Assembly (NCBI RefSeq): GCF_016432865.1
Contig: NC_067400.1
Location: 246,078,001 to 246,142,000 of the forward strand
Direction of reading: 5' to 3'
DNA from: Antechinus flavipes
Taxonomy: Eukaryota
Length of the DNA: 64,000 nt
Positions 1,491-64,000 of the stretch are shown here, piece by piece (position 1 is the stretch's first letter; each line of letters begins with the position of its first letter). A program made the translations under genes and the position numbers. Below the pieces are notes generated by a model. It saw nothing but the letters and a program-made list of their open reading frames with translations. It searched no databases and had not been told where the DNA came from.

Positions 1491-1996
1491 AAGGGCTTGA
1501 CCACAATCTCAACTTCAATCTAGAATTTGTGTGAACTCTTCTATCACTTGAAACTCAAGAAGTACTACTTTTGAGATACAGGATTATATAGCTAGATGAA
1601 GTATCAGATATAGAGAGAAAAGTGTAATAGAAGGAGGTCAGTGAAGTCTTGGAGAGTCCTGCCATGAAGACTGGATAGGGCATCAGTAACATTAATAATA
1701 TACCTTTGGCAACACTAAAATCATTTCTCATTAGAGGAATGAGATTGTGGCAGAGATTACTCAGAAAAACAGTGAATCAAGAGACAAAAGATAAAAACAA
1801 AATCTTAAATTGCTGGTGGTATTATCCGAGACCAAACAATTGCAAAAATGTGATTTTACATTAGCAATTTGACTAATGGTAATTATGCAATTCTGGCTTG
1901 GGTCTGTCACATTTCCTGATGTAAAGGTGTAGCTGGTGCCATACATACTCACAAAACATACTCTAACAACAATCTACCCAAGTGAATCCTGACATC

Positions 1997-2194
1997 ATGT
2001 GTTACTATGGCAGCTATTATGGGGGCCTGGGCTATGGCTATCGCTCTGGTTATGGCTGTGGATGTGGCTGCTTCCATGGTCTAGGATATGGTTATGGAGG
2101 CTGTGGCTATAGAGGCTGTGGCTATGGAGGCTATGGCTATGGCTGCTATCGTCCATCTTGCTGTGGAAGTTATTATTCTTATGGCTTCTACTGA
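1997..2194 (+). CDS. High Gly/Tyr keratin-associated protein, KRTAP20/19-like, 65 aa (ORF intact, promoter damaged, possibly silent)
   Basis: [30 protein letters not shown]...[19 protein letters not shown] context gacatcATG; AATAAA 2415-2420; TATA box deleted. Termini resemble human KRTAP20-2 as recalled (MCYY...[14 protein letters not shown]); the N-terminal half also resembles KRTAP19. Confidence 0.75.
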
Positions 2195-2894
2195 ATAATC
2201 CCTTGCTGGACTGTTAAGGAATCCTTACTCATCTTTTCTTTGGGTTAATTCCATGGTCTTGTAAGGACCTCACATTCCTTCTGTACCTGCAGCAGACTTG
2301 TCCTTCTGCTAAATGATATAGACTTTCACCTGTGATGAGGAAAACTCCTCCAACAACAACTCATTCTCAAAAAAATTGGCTCAGCTCATATATTATTGTG
2401 TCTTAAAACTTTCTAATAAACTTGTTTCCCTGGCTTAGCAAAGTTTTGTTTTTGTTTTTTAATGTGGCCTTCTTGACCTCCCTATCCTTGGGTTTCATGA
2501 TCTCTTCAGGAAGAGATTTCAACCTTGACGTATTTATTTGTGTCATTGCAGAACATTTTCCCTCCACTTCATTTTGGCAATGAAGTGAAACCTCTCCCAG
2601 TTTCTGTCAGCAAAGACATTATTTCCATTTCAAATGTCTTTCTCAAATCTGACTTCTGTAGTACTTAAGATTTCATTCTCTAATAATACCAATGGCTCAC
2701 CTTACTGAAGGCATGGTCTTTGTCTACAATAAGTTCCATCCCTTCTCCCACATTCTGTCCATAAAGAGACAGGGTTTTTATCTTCGAAGTTTCAAAAAGT
2801 TCCACATCTTCTTGGTGTCATATTCATAATTCATGATTTCTAGCTCCAAATTATCCCTGATGATTTCAAAATTTTCTTTCTAATCTTAGTCTGG

Positions 2895-3147
2895 AAAGCT
2901 ATGTGAAGTCGTGGGTTGAGTGCTGGAAATGGAGTGAAGAAGACCCATCTTCCTGAGTTCAAATCTGTCCCCATCAAATCTGTCCTAAACAATTTGTGTA
3001 ACCATGGATAAAGCATTTTGTTTGCATCAGTTTCCTTAATTGTATATTGCACTAGAAAAGGTAATGGCAAATGCCATTGTTTTCTTAGCCAAGAATTCCT
3101 CAAAGTAACAACTATTCAGACAACAGAGAAAAATTGTTGAACACCAA
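2895..3147 (+). mobile_element. Decayed MAR1/CORE-type SINE present in each unit
   Basis: gagtgctggaaatggagt...gagttcaaatctgtcc...cagtttcct...gaaaaggtaatggcaaa...gaacaccaa. Confidence 0.6.
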
Positions 3148-6430: not shown

Positions 6431-6495
6431 ATGGTGCTATACATACTTACAGAACCTGCCCTTAACATCCAACCATTCAAGTGAATCCTGACACC

Positions 6496-6693
6496 ATGTG
6501 CTACTATGGCAGCTACTATGGGGGCCTGGGCTATGGCTATGGCTCTGGTTATGGCTGTGGATGTGGCTGCTTCCGTGGCCTAGGCTATGGCTATGGAGGT
6601 TGTGGCTATGGAGGCCTGGGCTATGGAGGCTATGGCTATGGCTGCTGCCGTCCATCTTGCTGTGGAAGATATTATTCTTATGGCTTCTATTGA
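6496..6693 (+). CDS. High Gly/Tyr keratin-associated protein, KRTAP20/19-like, 65 aa
   Basis: [71 protein letters not shown] 6412-6417; gacaccATG; AATAAA 7004-7009. Confidence 0.92.
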
Positions 6694-10400: not shown

Positions 10401-10840
10401 TGCAAAGACTGGCTGGTTCATTATATTCTTAGTTTAAAATTGATCTGACACATGGTCTTGAACATTTTCCCTCATATCCAGTGCCTTTGCCTCTGACATC
10501 TTCTCCCATCAACTCTCCATGTTTGTGGCAAATCCCTTGTGTTTAAATGTTCTCTCTGCCTTTAGGACTTTAGAGGTGTCCAAGAAGAGGCATTTAGTAG
10601 ACATTTCACATAAACATAACTATAAGTTTAGGGGCTAGCACCTTGCAAAACCTGGGGAGGTGTCTTTTGCTTTATCTACTCTTGTAATAGGTGTTAACTG
10701 TGTAGATAGATTGCATCTAGACCAACTTCACCACAATCTAAATTCCAACCTGAAATTTCTATGAACTCTTCTCTCACTAGTGTCAAGAAGCACTAATTTA
10801 GAGAGCTAGGATTCCATTGGTGTGATGAAGTATTAAATAG

Positions 10841-11130
10841 TCCCTCCCTGCTTTTGGCTAATTCCATCATCTTTTAGGGACATCACATTCCATCTGTATT
10901 TGCATCAGGGTTGCATGGGAAAGCTACAGAGAGGATCTAGGAATCCTCATGAAACACTCAGATCAGCGAAATTGTAGGGATCAAGAAGCAGCAGGACCCA
11001 TGGTCCTAGGCAATGATGCAGAATCACACTTTCTAAGGAAGACTCCTTCAACAACTCATTTCCAGAAAGTTGGATCAACTCTGATACATGAAGGTTTATT
11101 GTCTGTCAAGACTTTTTAATAAACTTATTT
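10841..11130 (+). pseudogene. KRTAP relic: 3'UTR and polyA signal only (promoter and CDS deleted)
   Basis: Upstream motif gatgaagtattaaatag (10825-10840) is joined directly to 3'UTR sequence tccctccctgcttttggctaattcc (compare 14648). Orphan AATAAA at 11118-11123. Confidence 0.85.
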
Positions 11131-11994
11131 TCCTAGCTTAGCAAAATTGTTGTTATCTGTGCTTCTTGATTTCTTTTTCCTAGGTTCAGTATCTCATCAG
11201 GAAATAATGATGTATTTATCTATCTCATTGTAGAAGATGTGTTCTGCAATTCATTTTTGGCAACGAAGTGATCTGAAAAGACATCATTTCCATGTAAAAT
11301 GTCTTTATAAAAATTAACATCTACGTTATTTACATTTTAATACCCTTATAATTTAAAAACTCAATAATAATGTAATACTTAATAATATCTATACCCACTT
11401 TACAAAAGACACTGCCTTCTATTCATATAAGCTCCATCACTTCCTTGTTCTTCCTCATGGGCTGTGTGACTCTAAGCAAGCTGTTTAACTTCATTTACCT
11501 CAGTTTCTCATCTTATAATGAGCTGGAAAAGATAATAGTGATTGATTTCATCAATTCCATAGATATTCTTTCAGTGAAAGGGAAATTCTCTATGATTGCA
11601 CTCATTAAACAAAGATTATTTTATTTTCATTAGCAAATAAAAAAATCAGTTGCATAGGGGCAGAATGCTTTCTCTAAATCATTGTTATCCTTCTTTTTGA
11701 CAAGCAAAAGGGGTCTATTACATCATGTAGTGTCCAATTACACCTTCTTGTTGTACTCAATTAGTCACCATCTTGTACTTTCATATAAAAAATACTGACT
11801 GAAGCCCAGAGATTTATGTCTTTTGTTTCTTTTAACCATTCTCTCTGGAAAAGTGACAGAGAAAAATGTCCTACTTTTCCAGAATTTCCAAAACATTTCT
11901 TTGATCACTCACTGACCTAGATTCAGATCCATAATGACCTCTATGGTGATGTGGGGTAGTACCCATATTATCAATAGGTAACATACACAATTTA

Positions 11995-14398: not shown

Positions 14399-14611
14399 AT
14401 GTGTTACTACGGTGCCTATTATGGAGGCCTGGGCTATGGCTATGGCTCTGGTTATGGCTGCGGATGTGGTTGCTTCCGTGGCCTAGGCTATGGCTATGGA
14501 GGCTGTGGCTATGGCGGCCTGGGTTACAATGGCTATGGTTACGGTGGCTATGGCTATGGATGTTGTCGCCCATCTTGCTGCGGAAGGTATTATTCTTATG
14601 GCTTCTATTGA
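14399..14611 (+). CDS. High Gly/Tyr keratin-associated protein, KRTAP20/19-like, 70 aa
   Basis: [10 protein letters not shown]...[38 protein letters not shown] 14315-14321; AATAAA 14920-14925. Confidence 0.93.
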
Positions 14612-17600: not shown

Positions 17601-18149
17601 AGCTGGCCCATTCTCAAATTAGCAATCTTCATACCCTTTATTACCTACTTTGTATTTTATGGTCTTGCCAGTGTTAGCTTACCTTCCTTCATTAAGACAA
17701 TGCATGTCCTGTGTCTTTTGTTGGCCTTTGCACAGAGTGGCTGTCCACCCTGCCCAAAATACTCTTCTCTCTTCACTTCTCCCCTCTGACTTTTTTTTGT
17801 TCATTATATTCTCAGTTTGAAACCCACCTATTGCATATGGCCTTTTCCCCAAGTATAGTGTCCCTCTCTGACTCTGACTTCTCTCATCAACTATGTTTAA
17901 TGGCAGGTTCCTTGTGTTTACACATTCTCACTTGCCTTAAATCTTTAGAGCTGTCCTAGAATAGGGACTCTGTGGATATTTGTTATAACCCCAACCATGA
18001 GCCTAGAGGTTGACACAAGGCAAAAACTATCTGTTTTTGGAATGTGTGTTGGATATAGGGAGTCCATCAAGACAGTGTGCACCACAATCTCAATTCCAAT
18101 CTGAAATTTGTGTAAGCTCTTCTATCACTAGAGTGTCAAGAAGCACTAA

Positions 18150-18530
18150 TGTAAAGAGAAAAGATTCCATAGATATGATGAAGTGTCAGAAGCTAGACAG
18201 GCAAAAGTAATCAAGAAGGACAGTGAAATCTGGGAGAATGCTGCATGAAGCATAGGTAGGGCATCAATCACATTAACAACATAATTTTAGAAAATAATCT
18301 ATTCACAATTCAGGAATGAGATTGTAGTACAATCTTCTATGGAAAAAAAGAATCAAAAAGAAAAAAAATATTAAGGTGTTGATGGCGTTGTCAGAGATGA
18401 ATTGCAAAAATGTGATTTTACCCATGGGAATTTGGTTAATGGGAATTATGCATTTCTGGCCTGAGTCTGGCACACTTCCTACTGCCATAAAAATTCCTGT
18501 GCAGATGGTGCCTTACATACTCACAGAACC
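18150..18530 (+). pseudogene. KRTAP relic: promoter and part of 5'UTR only (CDS and about 3 kb downstream missing)
   Basis: Promoter motifs ttggttaatggg, cacacttcct, cataaaaattcctgtgcagatggtgcc and 5'UTR ctcacagaacc run straight into pre-CT-tract spacer sequence cactctttcctgggtgtgct. Confidence 0.75.
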
Positions 18531-18564
18531 CACTCTTTCCTGGGTGTGCTAGACCCTGCTCTTC

Positions 18565-18736
18565 NNNNNNNNNNNNNNNNNNNNNNNNNNNNNNNNNNNN
18601 NNNNNNNNNNNNNNNNNNNNNNNNNNNNNNNNNNNNNNNNNNNNNNNNNNNNNNNNNNNNNNNNNNNNNNNNNNNNNNNNNNNNNNNNNNNNNNNNNNNN
18701 NNNNNNNNNNNNNNNNNNNNNNNNNNNNNNNNNNNN
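18565..18736. other. Assembly gap (172 N)
   Basis: N run at the CT tract. Confidence 1.
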
Positions 18737-20042: not shown

Positions 20043-20294
20043 ATGTGCTACTACGGCGGCTACTATGGAGGCCTGGGCTATGGTTATGGCTCTGGTTATG
20101 GCTGTGGATGTGGCTGCTTCCGTGGCCTAGGCTATGGAGGCTATGGCTGTGGGGGCTGTGGCTATGGAGGCCTGGGCTATGGAGGCTATGGCTGTGGAGG
20201 CTGTGGCTATGGAGGCCTGGGCTATGGAGGCTATGGCTATGGCTGCTGCCGTCCATCTTGCTGTGGAAGGTATTATTCTTATGGCTTCTATTGA
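20043..20294 (+). CDS. High Gly/Tyr keratin-associated protein, KRTAP20/19-like, 83 aa
   Basis: Two copies of the 15-aa module [22 protein letters not shown] 19959-19965; AATAAA 20570-20575. Confidence 0.92.
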
Positions 20295-23261: not shown

Positions 23262-23578
23262 TTATTGTTCTGTCTTCTTATTTTTGTCTTCTTCTTGTCC
23301 TTTTTGTTGTTCTTGATCTTATCCTTATTCTTCTTATTTTTGTTCTTCTACTTGTTCAAATTTTTCTTCTTCTTTCTCCTCCTCTACATTCATCTCNNNN
23401 NNNNNNNNNNNNNNNNNNNNNNNNNNNNNNNNNNNNNNNNNNNNNNNNNNNNNNNNNNNNNNNNNNNNNNNNNNNNNNNNNNNNNNNNNNNNNNNNNNNN
23501 NNNNNNNNNNNNNNNNNNNNNNNNNNNNNNNNNNNNNNNNNNNNNNNNNNNTTCTCTTTTTTCTTGTCCTTCTGTACC
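23262..23578. repeat. CT-rich (TTC/TTG) tract spanning an N-gap
   Basis: ttcttg/ttcttc repeats on both sides of gap 23397-23551. Confidence 0.85.
23397..23551. other. Assembly gap (155 N)
   Basis: N run at the CT tract. Confidence 1.
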
Positions 23579-37304: not shown

Positions 37305-37460
37305 CTGCTTGTTCTCCTTATTGTCTTGTTCCTCTTCCTCTTTTCTTTTTCTTGCAATTCTTCTTTTTCTTCTTTGTCTTCTTCTTGCTGTTGTTCTTCT
37401 TGTTCTGTTTCTTCTCCTTATTCTTTTTCTTTTTCTCCTTTTTCTTCCTCATTTGGTTCT
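37305..37460. repeat. CT-rich tract (essentially identical to about 56065-56222)
   Basis: Spurious ORF translations 37295-37477 and 56056-56238 are identical. Confidence 0.9.
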
Positions 37461-39842: not shown

Positions 39843-42019
39843 ATAACCCTGGCTACTGGGCTGTCAAGGAATCTGTAGTCCTGGAAGAACATTACCTTCC
39901 ATCTGTGTCTGCAACTGGGCTATATGGGAAAGCTACCACAACAGGGTCTAGCAATTCCCATGGCACACTCAGAGCACCGAATTGGCAGTGACCAAGAAAT
40001 AGCAGGACCTATCCTTCTGGCAAGTGATGCAGACTCTCACTTGTCATGAGAGTGACTTCTCCAACAACTCCTTCCCAACAGCTTGGCTCACTTCTTATAC
40101 ATTATTGTGTCTTTTGTGACTGCAATAAACTTGTTTCTCTTACTTACTGAAGTTGTAGTTACTTGTCCTACTTGACCTCTGTCTCCTTGGGTTATACCCT
40201 CTCATCATGAAGAGATTTTCAGCCTTGATGTGCTTATCTGTGTCATTGTAGAAATTTACATCTCCAATGCATTTTTGGCAACAAGCTGATACCTCTGAAA
40301 ATTTCTGTTCAGAAATCACATTTTTCCATGTAAAATGTCTTTCTTGTATTTGACTATTACAATTCTTCCATATTAGTCCATTAAAATACATATACCCCAT
40401 TTTACTGAAGGAATGACTTCTGTCCCTTATAATGTCAGTCCCTTCTCTCACATTGTATCCATAAATGGAGAGTGCTTTTATTGTCAAAGTTTCAAAAAGT
40501 TTCATATATACTTGGTGTCATATTCAAGGTTTATAAATTCTTAATTACAAGATTTCCTTGTTGATTCCAGAATTGGCTTCTTAGTCCTAGTCTGGAAAGC
40601 TTGGGGAAATAGAGAATTGAGGACTGAAAATGGTGTCAGGAAAACTAATCTTTGTGTGTGCAAATCTCTCCTCATAACAGAAGTAGGTGAAGGTCTTGTT
40701 TGCTTCAGTTTCCTAATCTGTATAATGGATTGTACAAGGCTATCTTCTTTTTTTGGTCCAAAAATCCTCAGATGCAGTGTCAATGATTCAAAAAACAAGA
40801 AAAAATGGCTGAACAAGAAAATCCTTGTGTAAGCTCACTTTCGCCACTTTTTTTTCCCCTCTAAGTAATTTTCACATCTGAAGCACAGCAAAAGTTAATG
40901 GCACTGAACAATAATCACAGAAAGAATTATATACAATCTGAATTTTGGGGGGTTTATTTTCCTTATTTAATACTTCCTCTAGGGTCAGTTCCACTGACTA
41001 GGCTGAACAAAAAATCATGTCCCTCAGAGAATTCCCCAAATACTAGAACTTGACACTCCACCTGGTACTTAGGCAGTGCTTAGTAAATTTTGTAAGTTTT
41101 TGTATTTCTGACAGCTTTTAGTGGGAAAAGTCATACTTTTCCCTCAGCACCCTCACTCTGTTGAGTTCTTTCTAAAAATATCTCCAAAATGTTGAGCAAC
41201 TCATTTTCAGGAAAGATTACATTAAGGTCAATTGCATGGATGCAAAGACTTCAGTAAAAGGTAAATAATCACTTTCTCACCCTCCCTAAGCAAAGAATAT
41301 TTTATTTTGGTTAGCAAATACAAAAATCATTTGATTGGAGCAGAATACTATCCCTAAATCATTGTTTTCCTCCTTTTTGACAACAGAAGGGTTCTCAATA
41401 CATAAATAATACCTTAAGGGAACTAGGACAAGTCTCTGAATATCTTCTATACTCTAAAATTGGTGTTCCCTGAATTGAGCCACTTGAGTGTTAATCTGAA
41501 GGTCCTTTTACTACGTGGTCTGGACTTCTCTGGATGTTTTTCAGCTTAGCCAAAAATACCTACATGTAGAGCGAAACATTGCTATTTACACAAACCAACA
41601 TTTCTATCTTCCTAAACTTCAATCCCTTGGACTTCAGTTCATAAAATCTGAAAGAAGTATACGATTTCTGATTGTAAGAAATTGGGCTACCTTATGCTTT
41701 AGAATGCAATTGTAAAAGGACTAGAATCTAGGAGAAGAAATGACAAACCTCTGGATGCTGAACAGACTTGAGTTCATTTTCTTCTGGAAAATTGAAGAAT
41801 TTTTGAGTAGCTGTTCCACCTGAGTCAAAATCTTCTCTTCTCTCTGCTACACTTTGTCTCCTTATTTACCATGGACTCAGTTACTTGCTCAGTTTGACAT
41901 AAAATAGTCCACTTCCAGCTCCAGACCAACATTTCTTCTGAATTCACTGGTTCAATAGGATACCAGTGACTTGAATGGATGATCCTACCAATCTCATATT
42001 GTCAGCCCTGCCAAGGACT

Positions 42020-44858: not shown

Positions 44859-45056
44859 ATGTGCTACTATGGCGGCTGCTATGGGGGCCTGGACTATGGC
44901 TATGGCTCTGGTTATGGCTGTGGATGTGGCTGCTTCCGTGGCTTAGGTTATGGCCATGGAGGCTATGGCTATGGAGGCCTGGGCTATGGAGGTTATGGCT
45001 ATGGCTGCTGCCGTCCATCTTGTTGTGGAAGGTATTATTCTTATGGGTTCTACTGA
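44859..45056 (+). CDS. High Gly/Tyr keratin-associated protein, KRTAP20/19-like, 65 aa
   Basis: [14 protein letters not shown]...GYGHGG...[23 protein letters not shown] 44793-44799; AATAAA 45340-45345. Confidence 0.9.
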
Positions 45057-48599: not shown

Positions 48600-48842
48600 A
48601 TGTGCTACTACGGCAGCTACTATGGAGGTCTGGGCTATGGCTATGGCTCTGGTTATGGCTGTGGATGTGGCTGCTTCCGTGGCCTCGGCTATGGAGGTTA
48701 TGGCTGTGGAGGCTGTGGCTATGGAGGGCTGAGGTATGGAGGCTATGGCTGTGGCTGTGGAGGTTGTGGCTATGGAGGCTATGGCTATGGCTGCTGCCGT
48801 CCATCTTGCTGTGGAAAGTATTCTTCTTATGGCTTCTACTGA
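48600..48842 (+). CDS. High Gly/Tyr keratin-associated protein, KRTAP20/19-like, 80 aa
   Basis: [10 protein letters not shown]...GLRYGG...[23 protein letters not shown] 48516-48522; AATAAA 49127-49132. Confidence 0.92.
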
Positions 48843-52305: not shown

Positions 52306-52672
52306 TGTCAAGTGGAAGGAAAATGGTAACTTTTTGGAGAGCCTGGGTAGGGCATCAGTCACATTTTTTTGGCACCATCATAATCATTCACATTATCGGA
52401 ATGAGATTGTCACAAAATCTTCTCATAAAAATAATGAATCAAGAGGGGAAAAACAAAACAAAGCATTAAGGAGCATTAAGGTGGTGTCAGAAACCAAATA
52501 ATTGCAAGAATGTGATTTTTCCCAGGAAATTGGTTAATGGAAATGATGAAATCCTGGCCTGACTCTGCCACATTTCCTGCTCAAAGGGTATAAAAGTTGC
52601 TGTGCAGATGGTGCCATACATACTCAAAGACCCTATCCTGAAAATCCATCCACTCCAGTGAATCCTGACACC

Positions 52673-52924
52673 ATGTGCTACTACGGCGGCTACTATGGAG
52701 GCCTGGGCTATGGCTATGGCTCTGGTTATGGCTGTGGATGTGGCTGCTTCCGTGGCCTAGGCTATGGAGGCTATGGCTGTGGAGGCTGTAGCTATGGAGG
52801 CCTGGGCTATGGAGGCTATGGCTGTGGAAGCTGTGGCTATGGAGGCCTGGGCTATGGAGGTTATGGCTATGGCTGCTGCCGTCCATCTTGCTGTGGAAGA
52901 TATTCTTCTTATGGCTTCTACTGA
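52673..52924 (+). CDS. High Gly/Tyr keratin-associated protein, KRTAP20/19-like, 83 aa
   Basis: [10 protein letters not shown]...[23 protein letters not shown] 52589-52595; AATAAA 53213-53218. Confidence 0.92.
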
Positions 52925-53961
52925 AAAATCCCTTGTAATAACAAGGGCTGTCAAGGAATCTGTAGTCCCAGAAGAACATCACCTTCCATTTCTGTCTGCA
53001 GCTAAGCTATAAGGGAAAGCTACCACAACAGGGTCTAGCAATCCCCATGGTACATTCAGGGCATTGAAGTGGCAGTGACCAAGAAAGAGCAGGACCTATC
53101 CTTCTGGGAAATGATGCAGACTATCTCCTGTCATGAGAGTGATTTCTCCAACAACTCCTTCCCTGAAAGTTGGCTCACCTATCATACATTATTGTGTCTT
53201 TTATGACTTTGCAATAAACTTGTTTCCCTTGCTTACCAAAGTTATTGTTACTTGTCCTGCTTGACCTCTGTCTCCTTAGGTTTCAGTCTCTCATCAAAAA
53301 GAGACTTTCATCCTTGAAGTGCTCATATGTGTCATTGCAGAAGTTTAGATCTCCAATGTATTTTTGCCAACAAGCTGATGCCTCTGAAATTTTCTGTTAA
53401 AAATGACACTATTTTCATGTAAAATGTCTTTCCCAGATTTGATTCTTGCAATTCTTACATATTAGTCCATTAAAATACGTATGCTTCACTTTATTGAAGA
53501 AATTACCTTTGTCTCCTATAATCTCAAACCTTTCTCTCATGTGCTCATAAATGGACAGTGTTTTTATTGTCAAAGTTATAAAAAATTTCACATATACCTG
53601 GTGTCATATTCAGGGTTTGTAAATTCTGAATCCAAGATGTCCTTGTTGATTCCAGAATTCTCTTCCTAGTCTTAGTCTAGGACTGAGGACTGAGTGCTAG
53701 AAATAGAGTCAGGAAAATTTATCTTCATGTGTTCAAATCTTTCTTCATAAACTAAGTAGTTGGAGTTTTGTTTGCCTCAATTTCCTCATCTGGATAATGC
53801 ACTGGAGAAAGCTATATTCTTGTCTTGGACATTCAGATGCAGTGACAATGAATCAAACTTTTTTTCCTCCAAGAAATCTAAATATCTGAAGCACAGTACA
53901 AGTTAATGGCACTCCACAATAATCACAGAGAGAAAAATAATCATGTACACAGTCTGAATTT

Positions 53962-54568
53962 TTTTTGTTTTGTTTTACTTATTAAGCTTTCCCTCCAGTA
54001 CATTTAAAACAAAACAAATTTGCTTTTTTTCTAAAATTTTTGAGTTCTAAATTTTCTCCCTTATCCCCATCCACAATTAAGAAACCCCCAAGTTATGAAA
54101 AATATTTAGATAAAGGTCAAGTAGTCAAAAATACATAGCTCTCCCATGGTAATGAGTATAAAAATCTTCAAGAAAAATTCAGTTAAAAAAGAAACACAGA
54201 GAGATGACAAAAATAAAGAGAATGTCTTGGTCTCTATTCACACAATGAGTTATTTTTCTGAGTATGGGTAGGATTTTTCACCATAAGTCCTTCAGAGTAC
54301 TCATAGAAGATTGCAGTACTGAGAATAGCAAAGTTATCCACAGCTGGTTATCCCAGAACATTGCTATGACTTTGCATACAATATATTTCACTTGGCTTGA
54401 ATTCATGGAGGACTTTCCAGATTAATTTCTTCTGAGAGCATCCTGTTCATCATTTTCCACAAAATAACATTCCATCATAAACACATGCCACAGTAAACTA
54501 TTTAGCTACTTACCAGGGGATGGGAATTTCCCCTCAATTTCCAATGTTTTTGTCCTCAGAAGAGCTGC
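53962..54568 (-). mobile_element. Old truncated L1 3' end shared by several units (copy 5)
   Basis: Near-identical to 35230-35807. Confidence 0.75.
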
Positions 54569-57101
54569 ACACATGCTGAATATTGTCATCTAAATTGTCA
54601 CATTCAGTGGACTGAAACTCTACAAACCAGCTGCACATCTTTTCCAAATCAAACACTGACATGAACATGAAACTTTTACTTATATGAGTGTGAGGATGGA
54701 CGGCATAATAAGAAAATACTTAAATTCTCCTGGCAACTTAAACACACATGAAAAAGAGCACCTGTTTGGCTGCTCAGCAGAATGTCTAATATCCTTTGGA
54801 TTCCTCAGTTCCACTGGCTAAATTGTCCACAAAATCATGTACCTGACACAACTTTGCAAGATACTAGAGCTTGACATTCCACCTGGTACCATAGACAGGG
54901 CTTACTAAATTTTGTAAGTTTTTGTATTTCCACTGGCTTTTAGTAGATAATATCCTCAGCATCCACATTCTGTTGAGTTCTTTCTAAAAATATTTCCAAA
55001 ATGTTGAGAAACTCATTATTAAGAAAGATTACATTAAGGTCAACTGCATGGATGCAAAGCCGTCAGTAAAAGTGAAATCTTCTCCTTTTCAGCCTCATTA
55101 AGAAAAAATATTTTGGTTAGAAAATACAAAAATCAGTTGATTGGGGCAAAATGCTATCCCCAAATCATTGTTTTCCTCCTTTTGGACAAACAGAACGGTT
55201 CTCAATAGCTTGTACTACTATGTGGTGGCCATAAACACCTTAAGAGAACTAGGACAAGTCCCTTAATATCTTCTATACCCCCCAAAATACATCTTCCCTG
55301 AATTGAGCCACTTCAGTGTTAATCTGAAGGACCTTTTACCGTGGTCTGAACTTCTCTGGATGTTTTTCAGCTTAGCCCAAAACAACCACACAAAGAACAT
55401 TGATGCTTACACAAATCAACACTTCCATCTTCCTGAATTTCAATTCCTTTTATTTCATTTCATGAAATCTGAAGTTTGTGTAAGATTTCTGGTTGTCACA
55501 TGATATACTATTGGGCTATCTTATAGTTCAGAATGCAGTTGTAAGAGGACTAGAATCTGGGAGAAGAAATGACACATCTCTGGTTATTCAACAGTTCTTA
55601 GACTGAAGAGTTTCTGATCAGCTACACTTTCTCATTTGGTGTCCACTTTATTTACCATGGACTCAGTCACTTGCTTGCTTTAACATAAAATAATACAGTT
55701 CCAGCTCCAGTTCCAGACCAACATTGCTTCTGAACTCACTGGTTCAACAGGCTATCAGTGGCTTGAATGCATGATCCTACCAATCACATGTTGTTTGCAC
55801 TGCCAAGGACATTCCCACATTTAAGCATACATTGCCTTTACTGTGATTTATAGAAACTACTCAATGTCTCTAGTTGCTCTCCTTTCACTTCCTTTAAAAT
55901 CTCTGAACATCACATTCCTGACCTTCATCTTTAAGACAAACTACTCTCTGAAAGTGTGGGGTGATGTCCTCCTGAGTTAACCAAAAAGTCCAATTGACTG
56001 ATGTTTCATCCCTCTTTGGCTTTGAGATTGGTGGCCAATTACTCGTCCTGGGTGGGTGCTTGACACTGCTTGTTCTCCTTATTGTCTTGTTCCTCTTCCT
56101 CTTTTCTTTTTCTTGCAATTCTTCTTTTTCTTCTTTGTCTTCTTCTTGCTGTTGTTCTTCTTGTTCTGTTTCTTCTCCTTATTCTTTTTCTTTTTCTCCT
56201 TTTTCTTCCTCATTTGGTTCTTTAATAAAACTGATTGATTGAAGTCCAGATTCTGTCTCTTTTCTTTCTTTTACCCATGCTATCTGGAACAAGAGAAAAA
56301 ATATCTCCTTTCATTCCAGAGTTTACAAACAAATCACTGGACACTCACTGATACAGGTGGAGATCAATAATAGCATCTCTCATAAGAGTCAGACCCTCAT
56401 TATCAATAGTCAATATGAAAAAGTTCACTTTGATAAGCATTACACATTTCAAATAAGTCCATACCTAGAAGAGATTTCCTCATTTTGCCTAATTGCAAAG
56501 CTGCCTAGATCTCTTCAACTACTCTCTCATCCTTTCAAGAGCAATACGATCTAGCCAAGTTGGTAGGTTTACAGGGACAGAGATGTCCCTGACCCTCCAC
56601 TTCCACTGCAAATATCATCATAATTGAACAAATTTGTCTGCCCCATATTCACAACATTTCTGGCATTGAAATACTTATTTCAACTCACAAAGTATTCCAG
56701 TTAGACAAGACCCCCCCCCAGCACCTACCTAAAAGAGCTTCTGACTGGTATGCTTGACTCTATTGTTTGCTCACCTAGATCCTCTTTCCACTCATTTGTC
56801 CAATGGGTTGTTCAGGCTCTTCCTCCCCTAGGACTCCTGAAACTCTCAGGAACCACACTTGTCTTGTTAACTCAAACTACCTTTCCTTTTCTGGGCATTT
56901 AACCCTCTTCTGAAGCTGGGCAATCCCCAAACTGGAAGTTTTCATACCCTTTATTTCTCTTCTTTAAATTAATGGTGTTCCAAGTACTTGCCAACCTTCC
57001 TTAATGCATGGTGTGTGGCTTCTATTTGCCTTTGCAGAGACTGGCTGTCCAGCCTGCCCAGAAAATTCTCCTCTCTCTTAACTTTGTTCCCAATATTTTC
57101 T

Positions 57102-57487
57102 TTACTTTTTCTTTTTTTAATACATTTTTATTTACAAGATATATGCATGGGTCATTTTTCAGCATTGACAATTGCAAAGCCTTTTGTTCCAATTTTTCCC
57201 CTCCTTCTCCCCACCCCCTCCCCAAGATGGCAGGTTGACCAATACATGTTAATTATATTAAAGTATAAGTTAAATCCAATATATGTATACATGTACATAT
57301 AGTTATTTTGCTGTACAAAAAGAATCGGACTCTGAAATAGTGTACAATTAGCTTATGAAGGAAATCAAAAATGCAAGCAGACAAAAATAGAGGGATTGGG
57401 AATTCTATGAAGTGGTTCATACTCATTTCCCAGAGTTCTTTCTCTGGGTGTAGCTGGTTCTATTCATTATTGCTCTATTGGAACTGA
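57102..57487 (-). mobile_element. Duplicate of the 38364-38748 L1 insertion
   Basis: Same TSDs (57088-57101, 57488-57501) and near-identical sequence. Confidence 0.85.
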
Positions 57488-58309
57488 TCCCAACCTTTTC
57501 TAATCCATTACGCTCACAGTTTGAAACCCACCAATGGTGGGCTTGCACACTTCTCCAAGTATCCTGTACCTCTGCTTCTAAGATCTTCTCCCATCAACTC
57601 TCCCTGTTTGTAGCAAGTCCCTCTGTGTTTACATGTTCTCTCTGGTCTTAGGATTTAAAAGCCAGATATGGAGTGATTTCTTATATCCCTCATGTGAGGT
57701 TAGTGGAGAACAAAGTACAGAAACTGAGGAGGAGATTTGTGCTTTCTGATAAGTGTTGGGTAGATGGACTCCATCAACATGGTCTCCATCACAATCTCTA
57801 CTTGAATCTGAAATTTGTATGGAGTTTTTTGTCACAACAGTCACAAAAATCATTAATTTGAATTAATTTGAATGAAAGAAGATTTCATGGCTATGATGAA
57901 GTATCAAACAACCAGGAAACCATGTATAATGGAAGGAAATTGTTGATGTTTTGGAGAGCAAAGCCATGAAGCTTGGGTAGAGCATCAGTCTCGGGTTTTA
58001 CCATACCTTTGGCAACATCATAATTGTTCCATTATGGCTATAAGATTGTCATAGAACTTTCTCAGAAACATAATGAAACAAGAGTAAAAAACAAAAACAA
58101 AACATTAAGGAGCTGGTGGTGGTGTCAGAGACCAACAATTGCAAGAATGAGATTTTACCTAGGGAATTTGGTTAATGGAAATGATGAAATCCTGGCCTGA
58201 CTCTGCCACATTTCCTGCTCAAAGTATATAAAAGTTGCTGTGCAGATGGTACCATAAAACTCAAAGACCCTATCCTGAAAATCCATCCACCCAAGTGAAT
58301 CCTGACACC

Positions 58310-58561
58310 ATGTGCTACTATGGAGGTTGCTATGGGGGCCTGGGCTATGGCTATGGCTCTGGTTATGGCTGTGGATGTGGCTGCTTCCGTGGCCTAGACT
58401 ATGGAGGCTATGGCTGTGGAGGCTGTGGCTATGGAGGCCTGGGCTATGGAGGCTATGGCTGTGGAGGTTGTGGCTATGGAGGCCTGGGCTATGGAGGCTA
58501 TGGCTATGGCTGCTGCCGTCCATCTTGCTGTGGAAGGTATTCTTCTTATGGCTTCTACTGA
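58310..58561 (+). CDS. High Gly/Tyr keratin-associated protein, KRTAP20/19-like, 83 aa
   Basis: [10 protein letters not shown]...FRGLDYGG...[23 protein letters not shown] 58227-58233; AATAAA 58832-58837. Confidence 0.92.
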
Positions 58562-60469
58562 ATAACCCCTTGCTACTGGGCTATCAAGGAATCTGTAGTC
58601 CTGGAAGAACATTACCTTCCATCTGTGTCTACAACTGGGCTACCACAACAGGGTCTAGCAATCCCCATGGCACACTCACAACAATGACGTGGCAGTGTCC
58701 AAGAAGCAGCAGGACCCTTCCTTCTGGGAAATGATGCAGATGCAGACTCTCACCTGTCATACTTCTCCAACAACTTCTTCCCAGAAAGTTGGCTCACTTC
58801 TCATACATTAATATGCCTTTTATGACTTTGCAATAAACTTGTTTCCCTTGCTTACCAAAGTTGTTGTTACTTATCCTGCTTGATCTCTAGCTCCTTGGAT
58901 TTCAGTTTACTGTCAAGAAGAGATTTTCAGCCTTGATGTGCTCAGCTGTGTCACTCCAGAAGTTTAGGTCTCCAATACATTTTTTTGGTAACAAGCTGAT
59001 ACCTCTGAAAATTTCTATTCAGAAATGAATTATTTCCACATAAAATGTCTTTCTCAGATTTGACTACTGCAATTCTTACATCTTAGTCCATTAAAATACA
59101 TATGCCCCATTTTACTGAAGGAATTTCCTTTGTCCCCTATAATCTCAAACTTTTCTGTCATGTTATGCCCATAAATGGACAATGTTTTTACTGTCAAAGT
59201 TTCATATATTATTGGTTTTATAATCATGGTTTTTAAATTCCAAATCCAATATGTCCCTATTGATTTCACAATTGTCTTCTCTGTCTTAGTTTGGAAAGCT
59301 TGGTGAAACAGAGGATTGAGTCAGGCTTTTAGTGGGAAATACTCTCAAAACCTTCACTCTTTTGAGTTCTTTCTAAAAATGGTTAAGCAATTAATCGTCA
59401 GGAAACATTATATTAAAATCAATTCCATGGATACAAAATCTTCAAGGAAAAAAATCTCTTTTTCACCCCTCATTAAGCAAAGAATGTTTTATTTTGGTTA
59501 GCAAATATTAAAATCAGGTGGTTGAGGCAGGATGCTTCTCTAAATCATTGTTATCTTCCTTTTTGTCAAACAGACGTGGTCTAATACTTACACTATATGA
59601 TGAGCATAAAACATGTTAAGAGAGTAAGGACAAGTCCATGAATATCTTCTAAACCCAAAAGTCCTTGTTCCTTGAATTGAGTCACTTAAGTCTTAATCTG
59701 GAGGATCCTTTACCATGTGGTCTGGAATGCTCTGGATGTTTTTAAGTTTAGCCAAAAACCACCCATGTATTGAGTAGTGCTATATACACAAAACAATTCT
59801 TTCATCTTCCTGAACACCAATCCCTTATATTTCACTTCATGAAATGTCAAAGTTATTGTGGTATTTCTGGATGTCAGGTGACATTTATTGGGCAACCTTA
59901 TGCTTTTGATTGCAGTTGTATGAGGACTAGAATCTGGAAAGAGATGACACATTTCTGGATGCCCAAGAGACTTGAGTTCATTTTCTTCTGGGAGACTAAA
60001 GAATTTCTTAGGAGCTGCTCTCCCTGAAAGTCAAAAACTCCTTCTTTTCTCTCTGCTACACTTTCTCATTTGGTGTTCACCTTATTTACCATGGACTTAC
60101 TTACTTGCTTAGTTTGATATAAAATAACCCAGTTCCAGCTCCAGTTCCAGACCAGCATTTCTTCTGAACTCACTGGTTCAACAGCCTATCCATGGTTTGA
60201 ATGTATGATCCTATCAATCTCATATTGTCAATACTGCCAATGACTTCCATATTTAAGAACACATTGTCTTTTCAATGGTTTGTGGAAACTATTCAGGGTC
60301 TCTAGCTGCTCTCCTTGCATTTGCTTTCTCAACCTTCAATTTCAAGGGAAATTGCTCTCTGCAAGTTGTCCAGTGATGTTCTCCTGATTAAACTTAAAGG
60401 CCACTTCAAATTGACACTGCTGCTAAATTACCCTTCCTGGATTTGCTTGACCCTGCTCTTCCTGGTTGA

Positions 60470-61200
60470 TTCTCCTTCATTGATCTTTTTATCTTCTTGT
60501 AATTATTTTTCTTCTTCTTCATATTCTTCTTGTTGTTATTCTTGTTTTTGTACTTGTTTTTCTGCAATTTCTTCTTGTTGTTCTTACTCTTATTTTTCTT
60601 TTTTTTGTTGTTCATCTTCTTCATCATCATCTTCTTCTCCTNNNNNNNNNNNNNNNNNNNNNNNNNNNNNNNNNNNNNNNNNNNNNNNNNNNNNNNNNNN
60701 NNNNNNNNNNNNNNNNNNNNNNNNNNNNNNNNNNNNNNNNNNNNNNNNNNNNNNNNNNNNNNNNNNNNNNNNNNNNNNNNNNNNNNNNNCTACTCTCTAT
60801 AAATTGTCCAGTAATGTCCTCCTGTGTAAACCAAAAGGTCACTTCAAAGTGGCTGCTGCTTCATCAACTTTGACTTTGAGACTTATGGCCAATTACTCCT
60901 TCTGTTCATGCTTGATCCTGTTCTTCCTGTCTGATTGTGCTTTCTTGTTCCTGTTCTTCTTTTCTTCTTCTTGTAATTCTTGTTCTTTTTCTTCTTCATC
61001 TTCTTGTTCTTCTTGTTCTTGTTCTCCTTTTTTCCTTCTTATACTTCTAGTTCTTTTTCTTGTTCTTGTTCTTTTTCATCTTTTTTCTTATTTTTGTCCT
61101 ACTTGTTCATCTTTTTCTTCTTGTTCTTCTTCATATTAATCTATTTCTTCTTCTATTACTACTTCTTCTCCTCCTTCTTATGCTTCTTTCTTATTGTGTT
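60470..61200. repeat. Two CT-rich tracts separated by an N-gap and a second copy of the pre-tract spacer
   Basis: Tract 60470-60641, gap, pre-tract 60790-60925, tract 60930-61200. Confidence 0.85.
60642..60789. other. Assembly gap (148 N)
   Basis: N run at the CT tract. Confidence 1.
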
Positions 61201-62915
61201 CTTTAATGTAAAATGACTGACTCAAGCCCAACTTCTGTCTCTTTTCTTTCCTTTATCCATGCTATCTATAATAAGAGAGAAAAATCTCCTTTCATACCAG
61301 AATTTACAAACCAATCCACTGGACACTCACTGACACAGGTCAAGATCCACAATAGCAATTGTCATAAGATCCAGATGCTCACTATCAACAATCAATATAA
61401 AAAATTTCACTTTGATAATTATTACAAATTTCAAATCAGTCCATATCTAGAACAGATTTCCTCATTTTGCCTAATTGCAAAGCTCCCTGTCTCTCTTCAA
61501 CTTCTCTTCTTTCAGGAACAACAATATCTAGCCAAGTTTACAGTGACAGAGACTTCACTGAGCCTCCACTTCCATTGCAAATATCACTGTAATTGAACAA
61601 CCCCATTTGCTCTGTATTCACAATATTACTGACATTGAAATACTTTTTTCCAATCACAAAGATTCTCACATAGACAATATCCACACAGCACCACTTCAAA
61701 AGAGCTTCTGACTGGTGTGCATGACTCTTTTGTTTGCTAACCTAGATCCTCTTTCCACTCAGGTGTCCAATGAATTGTTTAGACTCTTCTTCCCCTAGGA
61801 CTCTTGAAAGTCCCAGGCTCCACACTTGTCTTGTAAAAACTAACTGCCTCTCCTTTTTTGATCATTTAAAGATACAGCTTCTGTCTGGCATTTAGCCCTC
61901 TTCTGAAGCTGGGTAATTCCCAAACTGGCAGTTTTCATATCCTTTATTTCATTTCCTTAATTTGATGGTGTTTCCGGTGCTAGCCAACCTTCATTCAAAC
62001 AATAAATGACATGTATTTTCTATTTGCCTTTGCATAGACTGGCTATCCAGCCTGTCCAGAAATCTTTCCTCTCATCTAACTTGCTCTTCAACATATTCTA
62101 GTCCATTAGTCTCATTATAGTCCATCTTCTCCCAGTTTAAAACCCAACAGTGGTGCATGGGCTTGCTCACTTCCCTAAGTATCCTGTGCCTCTGCCTCTA
62201 AGATGTTCTCTCGTCAACTCTCCCTTTTTGTTGCAGTCCCTCTGTATTTACATGTTCTCTCTAGTTTTAGGACTTTAAAGGCAGACAAAGAAAGGCATTC
62301 TGTAGCCATTACTTATATTCCTAATATGAGGTTAGTGGAGGACAAAGTGTAAAAATTGGGGATTTCTGTTTTATCTGCTTTTGGAATAATTGTTGGATGG
62401 ATAGACTCCAACACACTCTCAAGTCAAATCTGAAATTTGTATGAATCTCCTATCACTGGAGTGTCAAAGACCATTTATTTAGAGAAAGGATTTGACGGCT
62501 GTAAAGAAGAATCAGAGCCAAGAAAGCATGTATAATGGAAGGAGGATGGTGACATTTTGGAGAACAATGCCATGAAGCTTGAGTAGGGCATCAGTCACAT
62601 GCTTTAGCATACCTTTGGCAACATCATAATCATTCATATTATGGGAATGAGATTGTCACAGAACCTTGTCAGAAAAATGATGTATCAAGAGGGAAAAAAA
62701 CAAAACAAAACATTAAGGAGCTGGTGGTGTCAGATGCCAAACAATTGCAAGAATGAGATTTTTCCCAGGGAATTTGGTTAATGGAAATGATGAAATCCTG
62801 GCCTGACTCTGCCACATTTCCTGCTCAAAGAGTATAAAAGCTGCTGTGCAGAAGGTGCCATACATACTCAAAGACCCTATCTGAAAATCCATCCACCCAA
62901 GTGAATCCTGACACC

Positions 62916-63149
62916 ATGTGCTACTACGGCGGCTACTATGGGGGCCTGGGCTATGGCTATGGCTCTGGTTATGGCTGTGGATGCGGCTGTTTCCGTGGTC
63001 TAGGCTATGGCTATGGAGGCTGTGGCTATGGAGGCCTGGGCTATGGAGGCTATGGCTGTGGCTGTGGAGGCTATGGCTATGGAGGCTATGGCTATGGATG
63101 CTGCCGTCCATCTTGTTATGGAAGATATTCTTCTTATGGCTTCTACTGA
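62916..63149 (+). CDS. High Gly/Tyr keratin-associated protein, KRTAP20/19-like, 77 aa
   Basis: [10 protein letters not shown]...[23 protein letters not shown] 62833-62839; AATAAA 63438-63443. Confidence 0.92.
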
Positions 63150-64000
63150 AAAACCCCTTGCTACTGGACTGTCAAGGAATCTGTAGTCCTGGAAGGACAT
63201 CACCTTCCATCTGTTTCTACAGCTGTGCTACATGGAAAAACTACCACAACAGAGTCTAGCAATTTCCATGGCACATTCAGGGCAATGATGTGGCAGTGAC
63301 CAATAATGAGCAGGACTCATCCTTCTGAGAAGTGATGCAGACTCTCACCTATCATGAGAACATGATAGTTCTCCACCAACTCCTTCCCAGCAAGTTGGCT
63401 CACCTCTCATACATCATTGTGTCTTTTATGACTTTGCAATAAACTTGTTTCCCTTACTTACCAAAGTTGTTTTCATCTGTCCTGCTTATGTGTCTCCTTG
63501 GATTTTAGGCTATCATCATTAAGAGATTTTCAGCTTTCATGGGTTTATTTGTATCACTGAATAAGTATAGGCCTCTGATACATTTTTGGCAACAAGCAAA
63601 TACCTTTTAAATTTCTGTTCAGAAATGACATTATTTCTATGTAAAATAGCTTTCTCAGATTTGCAGTTCTTACATATAAGTCCATCAAAATACTTACACC
63701 CCATTTATTGAAGGAATGACCTTTTTCTCCTATATTCTCAGGTTCTTCTCTCATATTGTGCCCATAAATAGACAGTACATTTATTGTCAAAGTTTCTAAA
63801 ATAATTTATATGTACTCGGTATCATATTTATGATTTGTAAATTCTAAATACATGATGTCCTTGTTGATTTCAGAATTGTCTTCCCAGTCTCATTTTGGAA
63901 AGCTAGGTGAAACAAAGGATTGAGGAAATGGAGACAGAAAGATTTGTGTTAAAATCGGTCTTCATAGCCTAAGTAATTGAAGGCTTTGTTTGCCTCAATT

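What the first reader, a model, noticed from the sequence alone, without database searches (positions are those of the whole stretch)
1493..64000. Large lineage-specific tandem expansion of one HGT-KRTAP subfamily in a marsupial (13 intact genes and 2 relics in 64 kb)
Seen: 15 co-oriented units share the same spacer architecture and encode 65-97 aa Gly/Tyr/Cys proteins with near-invariant termini ([27 protein letters not shown] ... CCRPSC[C/Y]GRY[Y/S]SYGFY). Known: HGT KRTAPs (KRTAP6/7/8/19/20/21/22) are single-exon hair-shaft matrix genes that vary in copy number between lineages. Inferred: whole roughly 5-kb units, including ancient SINE/L2 spacer, were amplified in this lineage. Short low-complexity genes like these are often missed or collapsed in annotation, so this repertoire may be undescribed. 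The array probably continues past the window's right edge.
Basis: partly seen in the sequence, partly recalled or inferred. Interest (0 to 1): 0.72.

Follow-up and report, generated by a model that had tools for sequence, protein, structure and literature searches.

The report
Old marsupial hair-matrix gene array
The window holds 13 intact, unannotated copies of a small glycine/tyrosine-rich hair-matrix gene (KRTAP20-like) in a dasyurid marsupial; this kind of array is already published for opossum and wallaby, and the copies here are old duplicates kept by selection, not a recent burst.

Summary
There are 13 intact + strand single-exon ORFs of 65-97 aa (Gly 41%, Tyr 24%, Cys 15%) and two gene-less units, about 4.35 kb apart on average. 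All four proteins scanned match Pfam PF11759 (KRTAP) above its cut-off. No assembly gap touches a coding sequence.

"Lineage-specific" is supported only at the level of marsupials, and that is already published. KRTAP20 is expanded in opossum (36 intact + 6 pseudogenes, same ORF lengths and layout) and in wallaby (38).

In this window the units differ by 15-34% in their flanks. Synonymous sites in the conserved coding ends differ as much (pS 0.20) and replacement sites far less (pN 0.034; pN/pS 0.17). So the near-invariant termini reflect purifying selection on old duplicates, not recent amplification or wholesale gene conversion.

The one young event is a ~6.1-kb tract, 2.2% diverged, copied between two unit pairs. 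It is most likely a long ectopic conversion.

None of the 13 proteins is in a 15-billion-protein collection, so the practical gap is in annotation. g1 has an intact ORF but lacks the TATA box. Gap 4 could hide a further unit.

The scan noted the same array in overlapping and adjacent windows (s1-208974, s1-208948).

The parts
1997..2194 (+). g1, 65-aa KRTAP20-like ORF. It is intact, but the TATA box and the TTAATGG element are missing (14-bp deletion). Six residues differ from g2, several at positions conserved in nearly all other copies. Possibly promoter-dead.
6496..6693 (+). g2, 65 aa. TATAAA at -84, AATAAA at +311.
10726..11312 (+). Relic A: a unit whose proximal promoter and CDS are deleted (about -390 to stop+36), with the junction near 10840. 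The 3' UTR and AATAAA are retained.
14399..14611 (+). g3, 70 aa.
17965..18564 (+). Relic B: a 5' flank with a TATA-like box, ending about -35. Near 18533-18537 it is fused to the 28-nt lead-in of the TC-rich spacer block. The CDS, the 3' flank and most of the spacer are deleted.
20043..20294 (+). g4, 83 aa.
25310..25603 (+). g5, 97 aa, the longest copy, with extra 15/45-bp repeats.
30411..30608 (+). g6, 65 aa. The TATA box is present; the upstream TTAATGG element is deleted.
33939..34190 (+). g7, 83 aa.
39570..39842 (+). g8, 90 aa.
44859..45056 (+). g9, 65 aa. TATAAA is at -66 because of an 18-nt deletion in the 5' UTR.
48600..48842 (+). g10, 80 aa.
52673..52924 (+). g11, 83 aa.
58310..58561 (+). 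g12, 83 aa.
62916..63149 (+). g13, 77 aa. Its 3' flank runs to the end of the window.
33800..39900 (+). Copy 1 of the young ~6.1-kb tract (g7 CDS, spacer, g8 promoter and CDS). It is 97-100% identical to copy 2, and identity drops to about 80% outside both ends.
52530..58620 (+). Copy 2 of the young tract (g11 CDS, spacer, g12 promoter and CDS). Spacer divergence is 2.2% over 5340 aligned bases.
18565..18736 (.). Assembly gap 1, inside the TC-rich block. Its flanks are colinear with paralogues.
23397..23551 (.). Assembly gap 2, inside the TC-rich block. Its flanks map about 25 bp apart in gap-free paralogues.
32780..32909 (.). Assembly gap 3. About 1 kb of spacer present in paralogues is absent here, either deleted or unassembled. 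No CDS is expected in that stretch.
60642..60789 (.). Assembly gap 4. The lead-in plus TC-rich block occurs on both sides. The two copies are 66% alike, and each is closer to other units (76% and 81%). A unit may be hidden in the gap or have been deleted.
1..1495 (.). Left boundary of the co-oriented run. It consists of an inverted piece of spacer (84-443) and a repeat (494-1474) that also occurs at 12013-12951 (- strand) and 43354-43678 (+ strand). I take the repeat for an L1 3' end from memory; this is unverified.

Best explanation
This is a segment of the high-glycine-tyrosine keratin-associated-protein cluster of a dasyurid marsupial, most likely Antechinus flavipes. It is a head-to-tail array of KRTAP20-like single-exon genes.

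Gene anatomy. Each unit carries:
- a TATA-box promoter about 84 nt before the ATG;
- a homeobox-type TTAATGG element about 55 nt further upstream;
- a 198-294-nt ORF;
- a 3' UTR of about 270-310 nt ending at a conserved AATAAA.

Function (inferred from the family, not tested here). The proteins would be made in differentiating hair-cortex cells and form the matrix between keratin filaments. The conserved Cys-bearing N- and C-termini would make the contacts or cross-links. The central Gly-Tyr repeats vary in number by slippage of 15/45-bp units.

History. The units arose by old tandem duplication of whole ~4-5-kb units and have since evolved by birth-and-death under purifying selection. There are two deletion relics and one copy without a TATA box. 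One recent ~6.1-kb ectopic exchange overwrote one pair of units with another.

The array is this dasyurid's part of the KRTAP20 expansion already described in marsupials.
For: - Family: PF11759 is above its gathering score for all four proteins scanned. The best named hits are A. flavipes and S. harrisii KRTAPs, then eutherian KRTAP20-2-like proteins.
- Composition: G 41.4%, Y 23.9%, C 14.6%.
- Gene signals: TATAAA at -84 in 12 of 13 genes, TTAATGG at -139 in 11 of 13, ACCATG context, and AATAAA at +221 to +311 in all 13.
- Selection: pS 0.199 against pN 0.034; pN/pS 0.17, bootstrap interval 0.09-0.27. pS tracks flank divergence: 0.263 vs 0.295 between clades and 0.149 vs 0.215 within clade B.
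- Whole-unit homology of the spacers. A MIR-like core motif lies at the same offset (+854 to +873 after the stop) in four units.
- Young tract: the sliding-identity profile, and 5'- and 3'-flank trees that disagree (g8+g12 against g7+g11, each 100/99-100 support).
- Published parallel: opossum has 36+6 KRTAP20 genes, ORFs of 168-294 nt (intact genes), mostly co-oriented and 4-10 kb apart, with almost no conversion and omega0 about 0.10. Wallaby has 38.
Against: - There is no expression evidence.
- The species was not confirmed at DNA level. The only A. flavipes protein found is not encoded in this window.
- Assignment to subfamily 20 rests on best-hit names and on published nomenclature. My protein tree has 52 usable columns and is unresolved.
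- The ages depend on an assumed neutral rate.
- The promoter motifs are matches to consensus sequences recalled from memory and are not shown to be bound.
Confidence: 0.85

Rival explanations
1. One reading: a recent amplification specific to this species, genus or family produced the 15 units.
For: Copy number of HGT KRTAPs varies between lineages. The protein termini are nearly invariant. One 6.1-kb tract is only 2.2% diverged.
Against: Flanks differ by 15-34% and synonymous sites by 15-33%. Outside the tract the closest pair is 86% identical. The ages are at least 19-137 My, against 6.8-11 Ma for the Antechinus nodes. Conversion can only make copies look younger, so these ages are minimum ages.
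Confidence: 0.07
2. Concerted evolution: the conserved coding ends are kept alike by repeated gene conversion, as an earlier scan note reports for an array about 132 kb downstream.
For: One long exchange tract exists. Within clade B, pS (0.149) is somewhat below flank divergence (0.215). The neighbouring array is reported as converted (s1-208948, unchecked).
Against: Overall pS (0.199) is close to flank divergence (0.225), while pN is 0.034, and pS correlates with flank distance (r 0.52). Strong codon bias (GGC, TAT) may also depress pS. GeneConv found almost no conversion events in KRTAP20 of other species.
Confidence: 0.1
3. Most copies are unexpressed pseudogenes whose short ORFs merely remain open.
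For: g1 lacks the TATA box and g6 lacks an upstream element. There is no expression data. The RefSeq pipeline produced no model for any of the 13.
Against: pN/pS is 0.17, with no bootstrap replicate at or above 1. The proximal 200 nt upstream are more conserved (p 0.16) than the distal flank (0.26). TATA and poly(A) signals are conserved. Real gene death in this array shows up as deletions (relics A and B).
Confidence: 0.08

Closest known systems
Opossum (Monodelphis domestica) KRTAP20 array, chr4 7.82-8.17 Mb (Wu, Irwin and Zhang 2008, PMC2528016)
   Same: Small single-exon HGT genes with ORFs of 168-294 nt (intact genes), including 198, 213, 243 and 294 nt as in this window. They form long, mostly co-oriented runs 4-10 kb apart, with scattered pseudogenes, almost no detected conversion, and most sites under purifying selection (omega0 about 0.10).
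   Different: A different order (Didelphimorphia). Orthology with the units here is untested. That study reports positive selection at about 5% of sites; I could not test this on 13 short genes.
Wallaby KRTAP20 expansion, 38 copies (Khan et al. 2014, PMC4180150)
   Same: The same subfamily, expanded in an Australidelphian marsupial. The authors describe it as a marsupial trend shared with opossum.
   Different: It is described there as species-specific and positively selected. The divergences measured here argue that most duplicates in the dasyurid are far older than the species.
Eutherian KRTAP20-2 / KRTAP20-1 (for example the mouse and other rodent expansions)
   Same: The best named sequence matches. 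They share the MCYYG...[10 protein letters not shown]-terminus and the CCRP.CCGRY.SYGFY C-terminus, and they hit PF11759.
   Different: The eutherian proteins are shorter (45-65 aa), mostly have RYWSYGFY instead of RYYSYGFY or RYSSYGFY, and lack the [14 protein letters not shown] block seen here and, in part, in wombat.
KRTAP array about 132 kb downstream in the same genome (scan note s1-208948)
   Same: The same gene type, also a tandem array.
   Different: That array is reported as homogenised by conversion, with near-identical CDSs in older flanks. Here the synonymous sites are as diverged as the flanks.

Membership tests
High-glycine-tyrosine KRTAP (Pfam PF11759, Keratin-associated matrix) | Sequence match to the family profile above the curated cut-off | tested here: met
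   Scores are 23.1-35.6 bits against a cut-off of 21.1 for all four proteins scanned. The other nine are 89-98% identical to g2 at aligned residues.
High-glycine-tyrosine KRTAP (Pfam PF11759, Keratin-associated matrix) | Small protein with very high Gly + Tyr content and conserved Cys | tested here: met
   65-97 aa; G 41.4%, Y 23.9%, C 14.6%.
High-glycine-tyrosine KRTAP (Pfam PF11759, Keratin-associated matrix) | Intron-less gene with its own promoter and poly(A) signal, arranged in a tandem cluster | tested here: met
   The ORFs are uninterrupted. TATAAA is at -84 in 12 of 13 genes, AATAAA follows the stop in all 13, and there are 15 co-oriented units. The transcript ends are predicted, not observed.
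High-glycine-tyrosine KRTAP (Pfam PF11759, Keratin-associated matrix) | Expression in the hair cortex and presence in the hair-shaft matrix | not testable with these tools
KRTAP20 subfamily | Groups with KRTAP20 rather than KRTAP6/19/21/8/7 in a phylogeny | tested here: inconclusive
   Most of the eutherian hits are named 20-1 or 20-2-like and few are named 19-like. The tree on 52 columns has no well-supported branch. Published classifications place all expanded marsupial HGT genes in subfamily 20 and call subfamilies 6 and 19 eutherian-only.
KRTAP20 subfamily | Location in the HGT cluster next to KRTAP7, KRTAP8 and KRTAP11 | not testable with these tools
Lineage-specific (recent) expansion | Paralogues much less diverged than the age of the lineage, and no orthologues in sister taxa | tested here: not met
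   Flank divergence is 15-34% and pS is 0.15-0.33, giving ages of at least 19-137 My against nodes at 6.8-11 Ma. The orthologue half of the feature could not be tested.

The most novel reading that the evidence does not exclude
Most units of this array may be one-to-one orthologues retained under purifying selection since before the dasyurid radiation, perhaps since the Australidelphia-Didelphimorphia split (about 72-80 Ma). If so, the 'species-specific, positively selected' KRTAP20 expansions reported separately for opossum and wallaby would be one ancient marsupial expansion. The genus-level change would then be limited to events such as the 6.1-kb exchange tract and deletions.
Probability: 0.3. 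Interest if true: 0.4.

Novelty: new member of a known kind. Interest (0 to 1): 0.25.

Why it matters
The value is practical. Thirteen apparently functional hair-matrix genes in 64 kb are absent from the public protein sets, and the one related A. flavipes gene model found is a chimera of two neighbouring genes. Gene-family counts and selection scans that rely on marsupial annotations will therefore undercount HGT KRTAPs.

On evolution, the measured divergences change the reading from 'recent burst' to 'old array kept by purifying selection'. This fits birth-and-death evolution and the published lack of conversion in KRTAP20. It also gives a testable prediction of conserved synteny across dasyurids. 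None of this would surprise a specialist.

Tried and rejected
No expression or read-level check of the gaps or of the 6.1-kb tract was therefore possible, and read laying was not used.
The devil and A. flavipes loci could not be fetched, so cross-species synteny, the decisive test, was not run.
- The protein tree with 81 database relatives is unresolved on 52 columns. It was used only to show that it cannot settle the subfamily or orthology.
- The supplements of both KRTAP papers hold coordinates, not sequences, so signature motifs could not be compared with opossum or wallaby.
- RNAalifold on the 13 3' UTRs gave no covariation support (covariation term +0.62).
- Rfam found nothing at gathering scores.
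- Pfam and the ESM Atlas gave nothing for the suspected L1 ORF fragments, so their identity rests on memory.
- PDB sequence search: no hit, as expected for a low-complexity protein.
- The large representative-protein search was not run.
- Rejected: wholesale gene conversion as the cause of the conserved termini, because pS is about equal to flank divergence.
- Rejected: relic B as an artefact of gap 1, because the deletion junction lies left of the gap.
Full report
**Observation**

A scan for ATG-TGY-TAY starts finds 13 + strand ORFs of 65, 65, 70, 83, 97, 65, 83, 90, 65, 80, 83, 83 and 77 aa. Their ATGs are at 1997, 6496, 14399, 20043, 25310, 30411, 33939, 39570, 44859, 48600, 52673, 58310 and 62916. 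tblastn with two of the proteins, with low-complexity filtering off, finds exactly these 13 loci and nothing on the - strand.

The proteins are 89-98% identical to g2 at aligned positions. The N-terminus (about 29 residues) and the C-terminus (about 24 residues) are almost invariant. The length differences all lie in a central Gly-Tyr-Cys repeat, which Tandem Repeats Finder reports as 15-bp and 45-bp periods. Composition is Gly 41.4%, Tyr 23.9% and Cys 14.6%. Mean ATG-to-ATG spacing, counting the two gene-less units, is 4.35 kb.

**Assembly gaps, tested first**

- The four N runs are at 18565-18736, 23397-23551, 32780-32909 and 60642-60789.
- None lies in or next to a CDS. All lie inside the TC-rich low-complexity block that every spacer carries about 1-2.5 kb upstream of the next gene.
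- At gaps 1 and 2 the flanks map to neighbouring positions in gap-free paralogous spacers.
- At gap 3, about 1.2 kb that separates the two flanks in paralogues is reduced to 263 bp including the Ns. About 1 kb of spacer is therefore deleted or unassembled. No gene is expected in that stretch.
- At gap 4 the lead-in plus TC-rich block is present on both sides. The two copies are only 66% alike, and each is closer to other units (76% and 81%). Either a whole unit is hidden in the gap, or an old deletion fused two units.
- I did not try to fill any gap. The unit count is a lower bound.

**The two relics**

blastn of g2 with 400-bp flanks finds 15 loci.

- Relic A aligns to paralogues from about -1300 to about -390 relative to their ATG, up to window position about 10840. 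It resumes at stop+36 to stop+50 at 10840-10880. A deletion of about 0.65 kb therefore removed the proximal promoter and the CDS and left the 3' UTR and AATAAA.
- Relic B aligns to 5' flanks up to about -35, at window position about 18530-18536. Its last 28 nt before gap 1 instead match the lead-in that precedes the TC-rich block in other spacers, for example 89% to 60434-60461. The deletion junction therefore lies left of the gap, and relic B is real, not an artefact of the gap.

**Unit architecture**

- 84-100% of every spacer aligns to at least one other spacer, at 67-84% weighted identity. Whole units were duplicated, spacer included.
- A short MIR-core-like motif occurs at the same offset, +854 to +873 after the stop, in units g4, g7, g8 and g11. 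The motif was recalled from memory, so it is only a lead.
- Unit-specific insertions also exist. A repeat at 494-1474, 12013-12951 (- strand) and 43354-43678 looks to me like an L1 3' end, but Pfam and the Atlas did not confirm it.
- Left of about 1495 the unit homology stops. An inverted spacer piece follows, so the co-oriented run starts or is interrupted there.
- On the right, the last 851 nt align to the 3' flank of the other units as far as the edge. Scan notes describe KRTAP arrays in the next windows; I did not check those notes.

**What the genes are**

- All four proteins scanned match Pfam PF11759 (Keratin-associated matrix) above the gathering score.
- The word-indexed protein search returns, in order, an Antechinus flavipes model (E 1.7e-21), a Sarcophilus harrisii model (7e-13) and an unnamed metagenome-set protein. 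Then come about 75 eutherian proteins, nearly all named KRTAP20-1 or 20-2-like, and one wombat fragment. A profile of the 13 proteins gives the same picture.
- This supports a dasyurid origin. An earlier scan note names the genome as the yellow-footed antechinus. I could not confirm that at DNA level.
- A tree of these short, low-complexity proteins has only 52 usable columns and no well-supported branch. Assignment to subfamily 20 therefore rests on best-hit names and on published nomenclature, under which subfamilies 6 and 19 are eutherian-only and marsupial HGT expansions are subfamily 20.

**Gene anatomy**

An alignment of the 165 nt before each ATG shows the following.

- GTATAAAAG, with TATAAA at -84 (±2), is present in 11 genes. 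In g9 it is at -66 because of an 18-nt deletion in the 5' UTR.
- g1 has lost it through a 14-bp deletion.
- A TTAATGG element lies at -139 in 11 of 13 genes. It is changed in g1 and deleted in g6.
- All 13 genes have an ACCATG or ATCATG start context.

From memory, TTAATGG fits the HOXC13 site TT(A/T)ATNPuPu of Jave-Suarez et al. 2002. HOXC13 and LEF1 are listed as regulators of hair-shaft keratin genes in PMC10052683. Binding here is inferred only.

Downstream, TTTGCAATAAACTTG is conserved at +267 to +311 in 12 genes. In g1 it is at +221, because g1 has a deletion in its 3' UTR. The predicted mRNAs are single-exon and roughly 0.55-0.7 kb long. The proximal 200 nt upstream are more conserved (mean p 0.16) than -500 to -201 (0.26) or the 3' flank (0.22-0.24).

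**Selection or conversion**

I analysed the 53 ungapped codons of the conserved ends with the Nei-Gojobori method.

| Comparison | pS | pN | Distal-flank divergence |
|---|---|---|---|
| All pairs | 0.199 | 0.034 | 0.225 (mean of all four flank regions, -500 to +500) |
| Between unit clades A and B | 0.263 | 0.038 | 0.295 |
| Within clade A | 0.328 | 0.032 | 0.277 |
| Within clade B | 0.149 | 0.031 | 0.215 |

- Overall pN/pS is 0.17, with a codon-bootstrap 95% interval of 0.09-0.27 and no replicate at or above 1.
- Synonymous divergence tracks flank divergence in every comparison.
- The near-invariant termini are therefore explained by long-term purifying selection on old copies, not by recent origin or CDS-limited conversion.
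- This agrees with the literature on KRTAP20: almost no GeneConv events, and omega0 of about 0.10 for the main site class in opossum.

**Duplication history**

- ML trees of 450 nt of 5' flank and of 450 nt of 3' flank both split the units into clade A (g1-g3) and clade B (g4-g13), with 100/98-100 support. Clade A has terminal branches of 0.15-0.20. Clade B is star-like, with terminal branches of mostly 0.04-0.12 and one of 0.21.
- The one close relationship differs between the two trees. g8+g12 pair in the 5' tree and g7+g11 pair in the 3' tree.
- A sliding-identity profile explains this. From about 33.8 kb to about 39.9 kb, against about 52.5-58.6 kb, identity is 94-100%. It falls to about 80% beyond both ends.
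- Inside the tract the spacer differs at 117 of 5340 aligned sites, which is 2.2%.
- The tract starts just upstream of one CDS and ends just after the next. It sits in register in two places four units apart, and both places keep older, paralogue-level flanks. The most economical reading is a long ectopic gene-conversion or double-exchange tract that overwrote one unit pair with another, not an added duplication.
- An assembly duplicate cannot be excluded without reads. The 2.2% divergence and 84 gap columns argue against it.
- The two protein pairs have since changed at 4 and about 7.5 replacement sites, against 2 and 3.5 synonymous sites. These counts are too few for any claim about selection.

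**Dating**

Jukes-Cantor distances were converted with three rates: 1.37e-9 (the value used for Antechinus in PMC9290055), 2.2e-9 and 4e-9 per site per year.

| Comparison | Age range |
|---|---|
| The 6.1-kb tract | 3-8 My |
| Closest pair outside the tract | 19-57 My |
| Clade B | 32-92 My |
| Split between clades A and B | 47-137 My |

The Antechinus crown is 6.8 Ma, the Antechinus-Murexia split is 11 Ma, the calibration used for devil-Murexia is 4-22 Ma, and dasyurid-didelphid divergence is about 72 Ma. Conversion makes copies look younger, so these are minimum ages. The array is therefore predicted to be largely shared across Dasyuridae and possibly far beyond. Only the tract is young enough to be genus-level. 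This is inference from divergence.

**Comparison with what is known**

- Wu, Irwin and Zhang 2008 list 36 intact and 6 disrupted KRTAP20 genes in opossum, on chr4 7.82-8.17 Mb and one unplaced scaffold. The intact ORFs are 168-294 nt and include 198, 213, 243 and 294 nt, as in this window. Most are co-oriented and 4-10 kb apart, on either side of KRTAP8, KRTAP7 and KRTAP11.
- Khan et al. 2014 report 38 copies in wallaby. They state that both marsupials show expansion of subfamily 20.
- The kind of feature is thus known. What this window adds is a dasyurid instance and the measurement that its copies are old.

**Annotation status**

- None of the 13 exact proteins is in the 15-billion-sequence collection, which does hold A. 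flavipes RefSeq proteins.
- The only related A. flavipes model, XP_051846539.1 (132 aa), reads the first 50 residues of one gene and then runs into the 5' leader and the CDS of a neighbouring paralogue. It is a chimeric model, and it is not encoded in this window.
- Across all marsupials the searches found only this model, one devil model and one wombat fragment.

**Not done**

- No read-level or expression data were obtained.
- No cross-species DNA was fetched.
- No N stretch was filled.
- Nothing in the window was taken for human sequence.

**Verdict**

It is an ordinary, already-familiar kind of gene array. The 'lineage-specific expansion' reading needs correcting to 'old marsupial array under purifying selection with one recent exchange'. 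Interest is low to moderate, mainly as an annotation gap.

Noticed in passing
window 33800-39900 and 52530-58620: A ~6.1-kb tract running from one CDS to the next is 2.2% diverged between two unit pairs 18.7 kb apart, inside flanks that are about 20% diverged. The 5'- and 3'-flank trees disagree accordingly. This looks like an unusually long ectopic conversion tract, 3-8 My old.
   Followed up: partly
window 1837-2194 (g1): g1 keeps an open 65-aa ORF but has lost the TATA box (14-bp deletion) and the TTAATGG element, has a deletion of about 90 nt in its 3' UTR, and differs from g2 at six residues. It may be a promoter-dead pseudogene that an ORF-based count scores as intact.
   Followed up: partly
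window 60355-61200 (around gap 60642-60789): The spacer lead-in and TC-rich block occur on both sides of the gap. The two copies are only 66% alike, and each is closer to other units. Either a 16th unit is hidden in the gap or an old deletion fused two units.
   Followed up: partly
window 1-1495: The co-oriented run ends at about 1495. Upstream lie a repeat also present at 12013-12951 (- strand) and 43354-43678 (+ strand), and an inverted piece of spacer (84-443). This hints at an inversion breakpoint or an oppositely oriented block to the left, as in the opossum array.
   Followed up: partly
XP_051846539.1 (P0001), Antechinus flavipes RefSeq; not in this window: This 132-aa model is a chimera. 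It has 50 residues of one KRTAP20-like gene spliced onto the 5' leader and CDS of a neighbouring paralogue.
   Followed up: partly
window, 3' UTRs of the 13 genes (stop to about +330): RNAalifold finds no covariation-supported structure (covariation term +0.62, total -12 kcal/mol over 363 columns). Short blocks such as CTCCAACAAC and TTGGCTCA are conserved at sequence level without an explanation.
   Followed up: partly
window -139 relative to each ATG (for example 6357, 19904): TTAATGG is conserved in 11 of 13 promoters, 55 nt upstream of the TATA box. It fits a homeobox (HOXC13-type) site as I recall the consensus. CAAAG is found just 5' of the TATA box in eight of the ten clade B genes.
   Followed up: no
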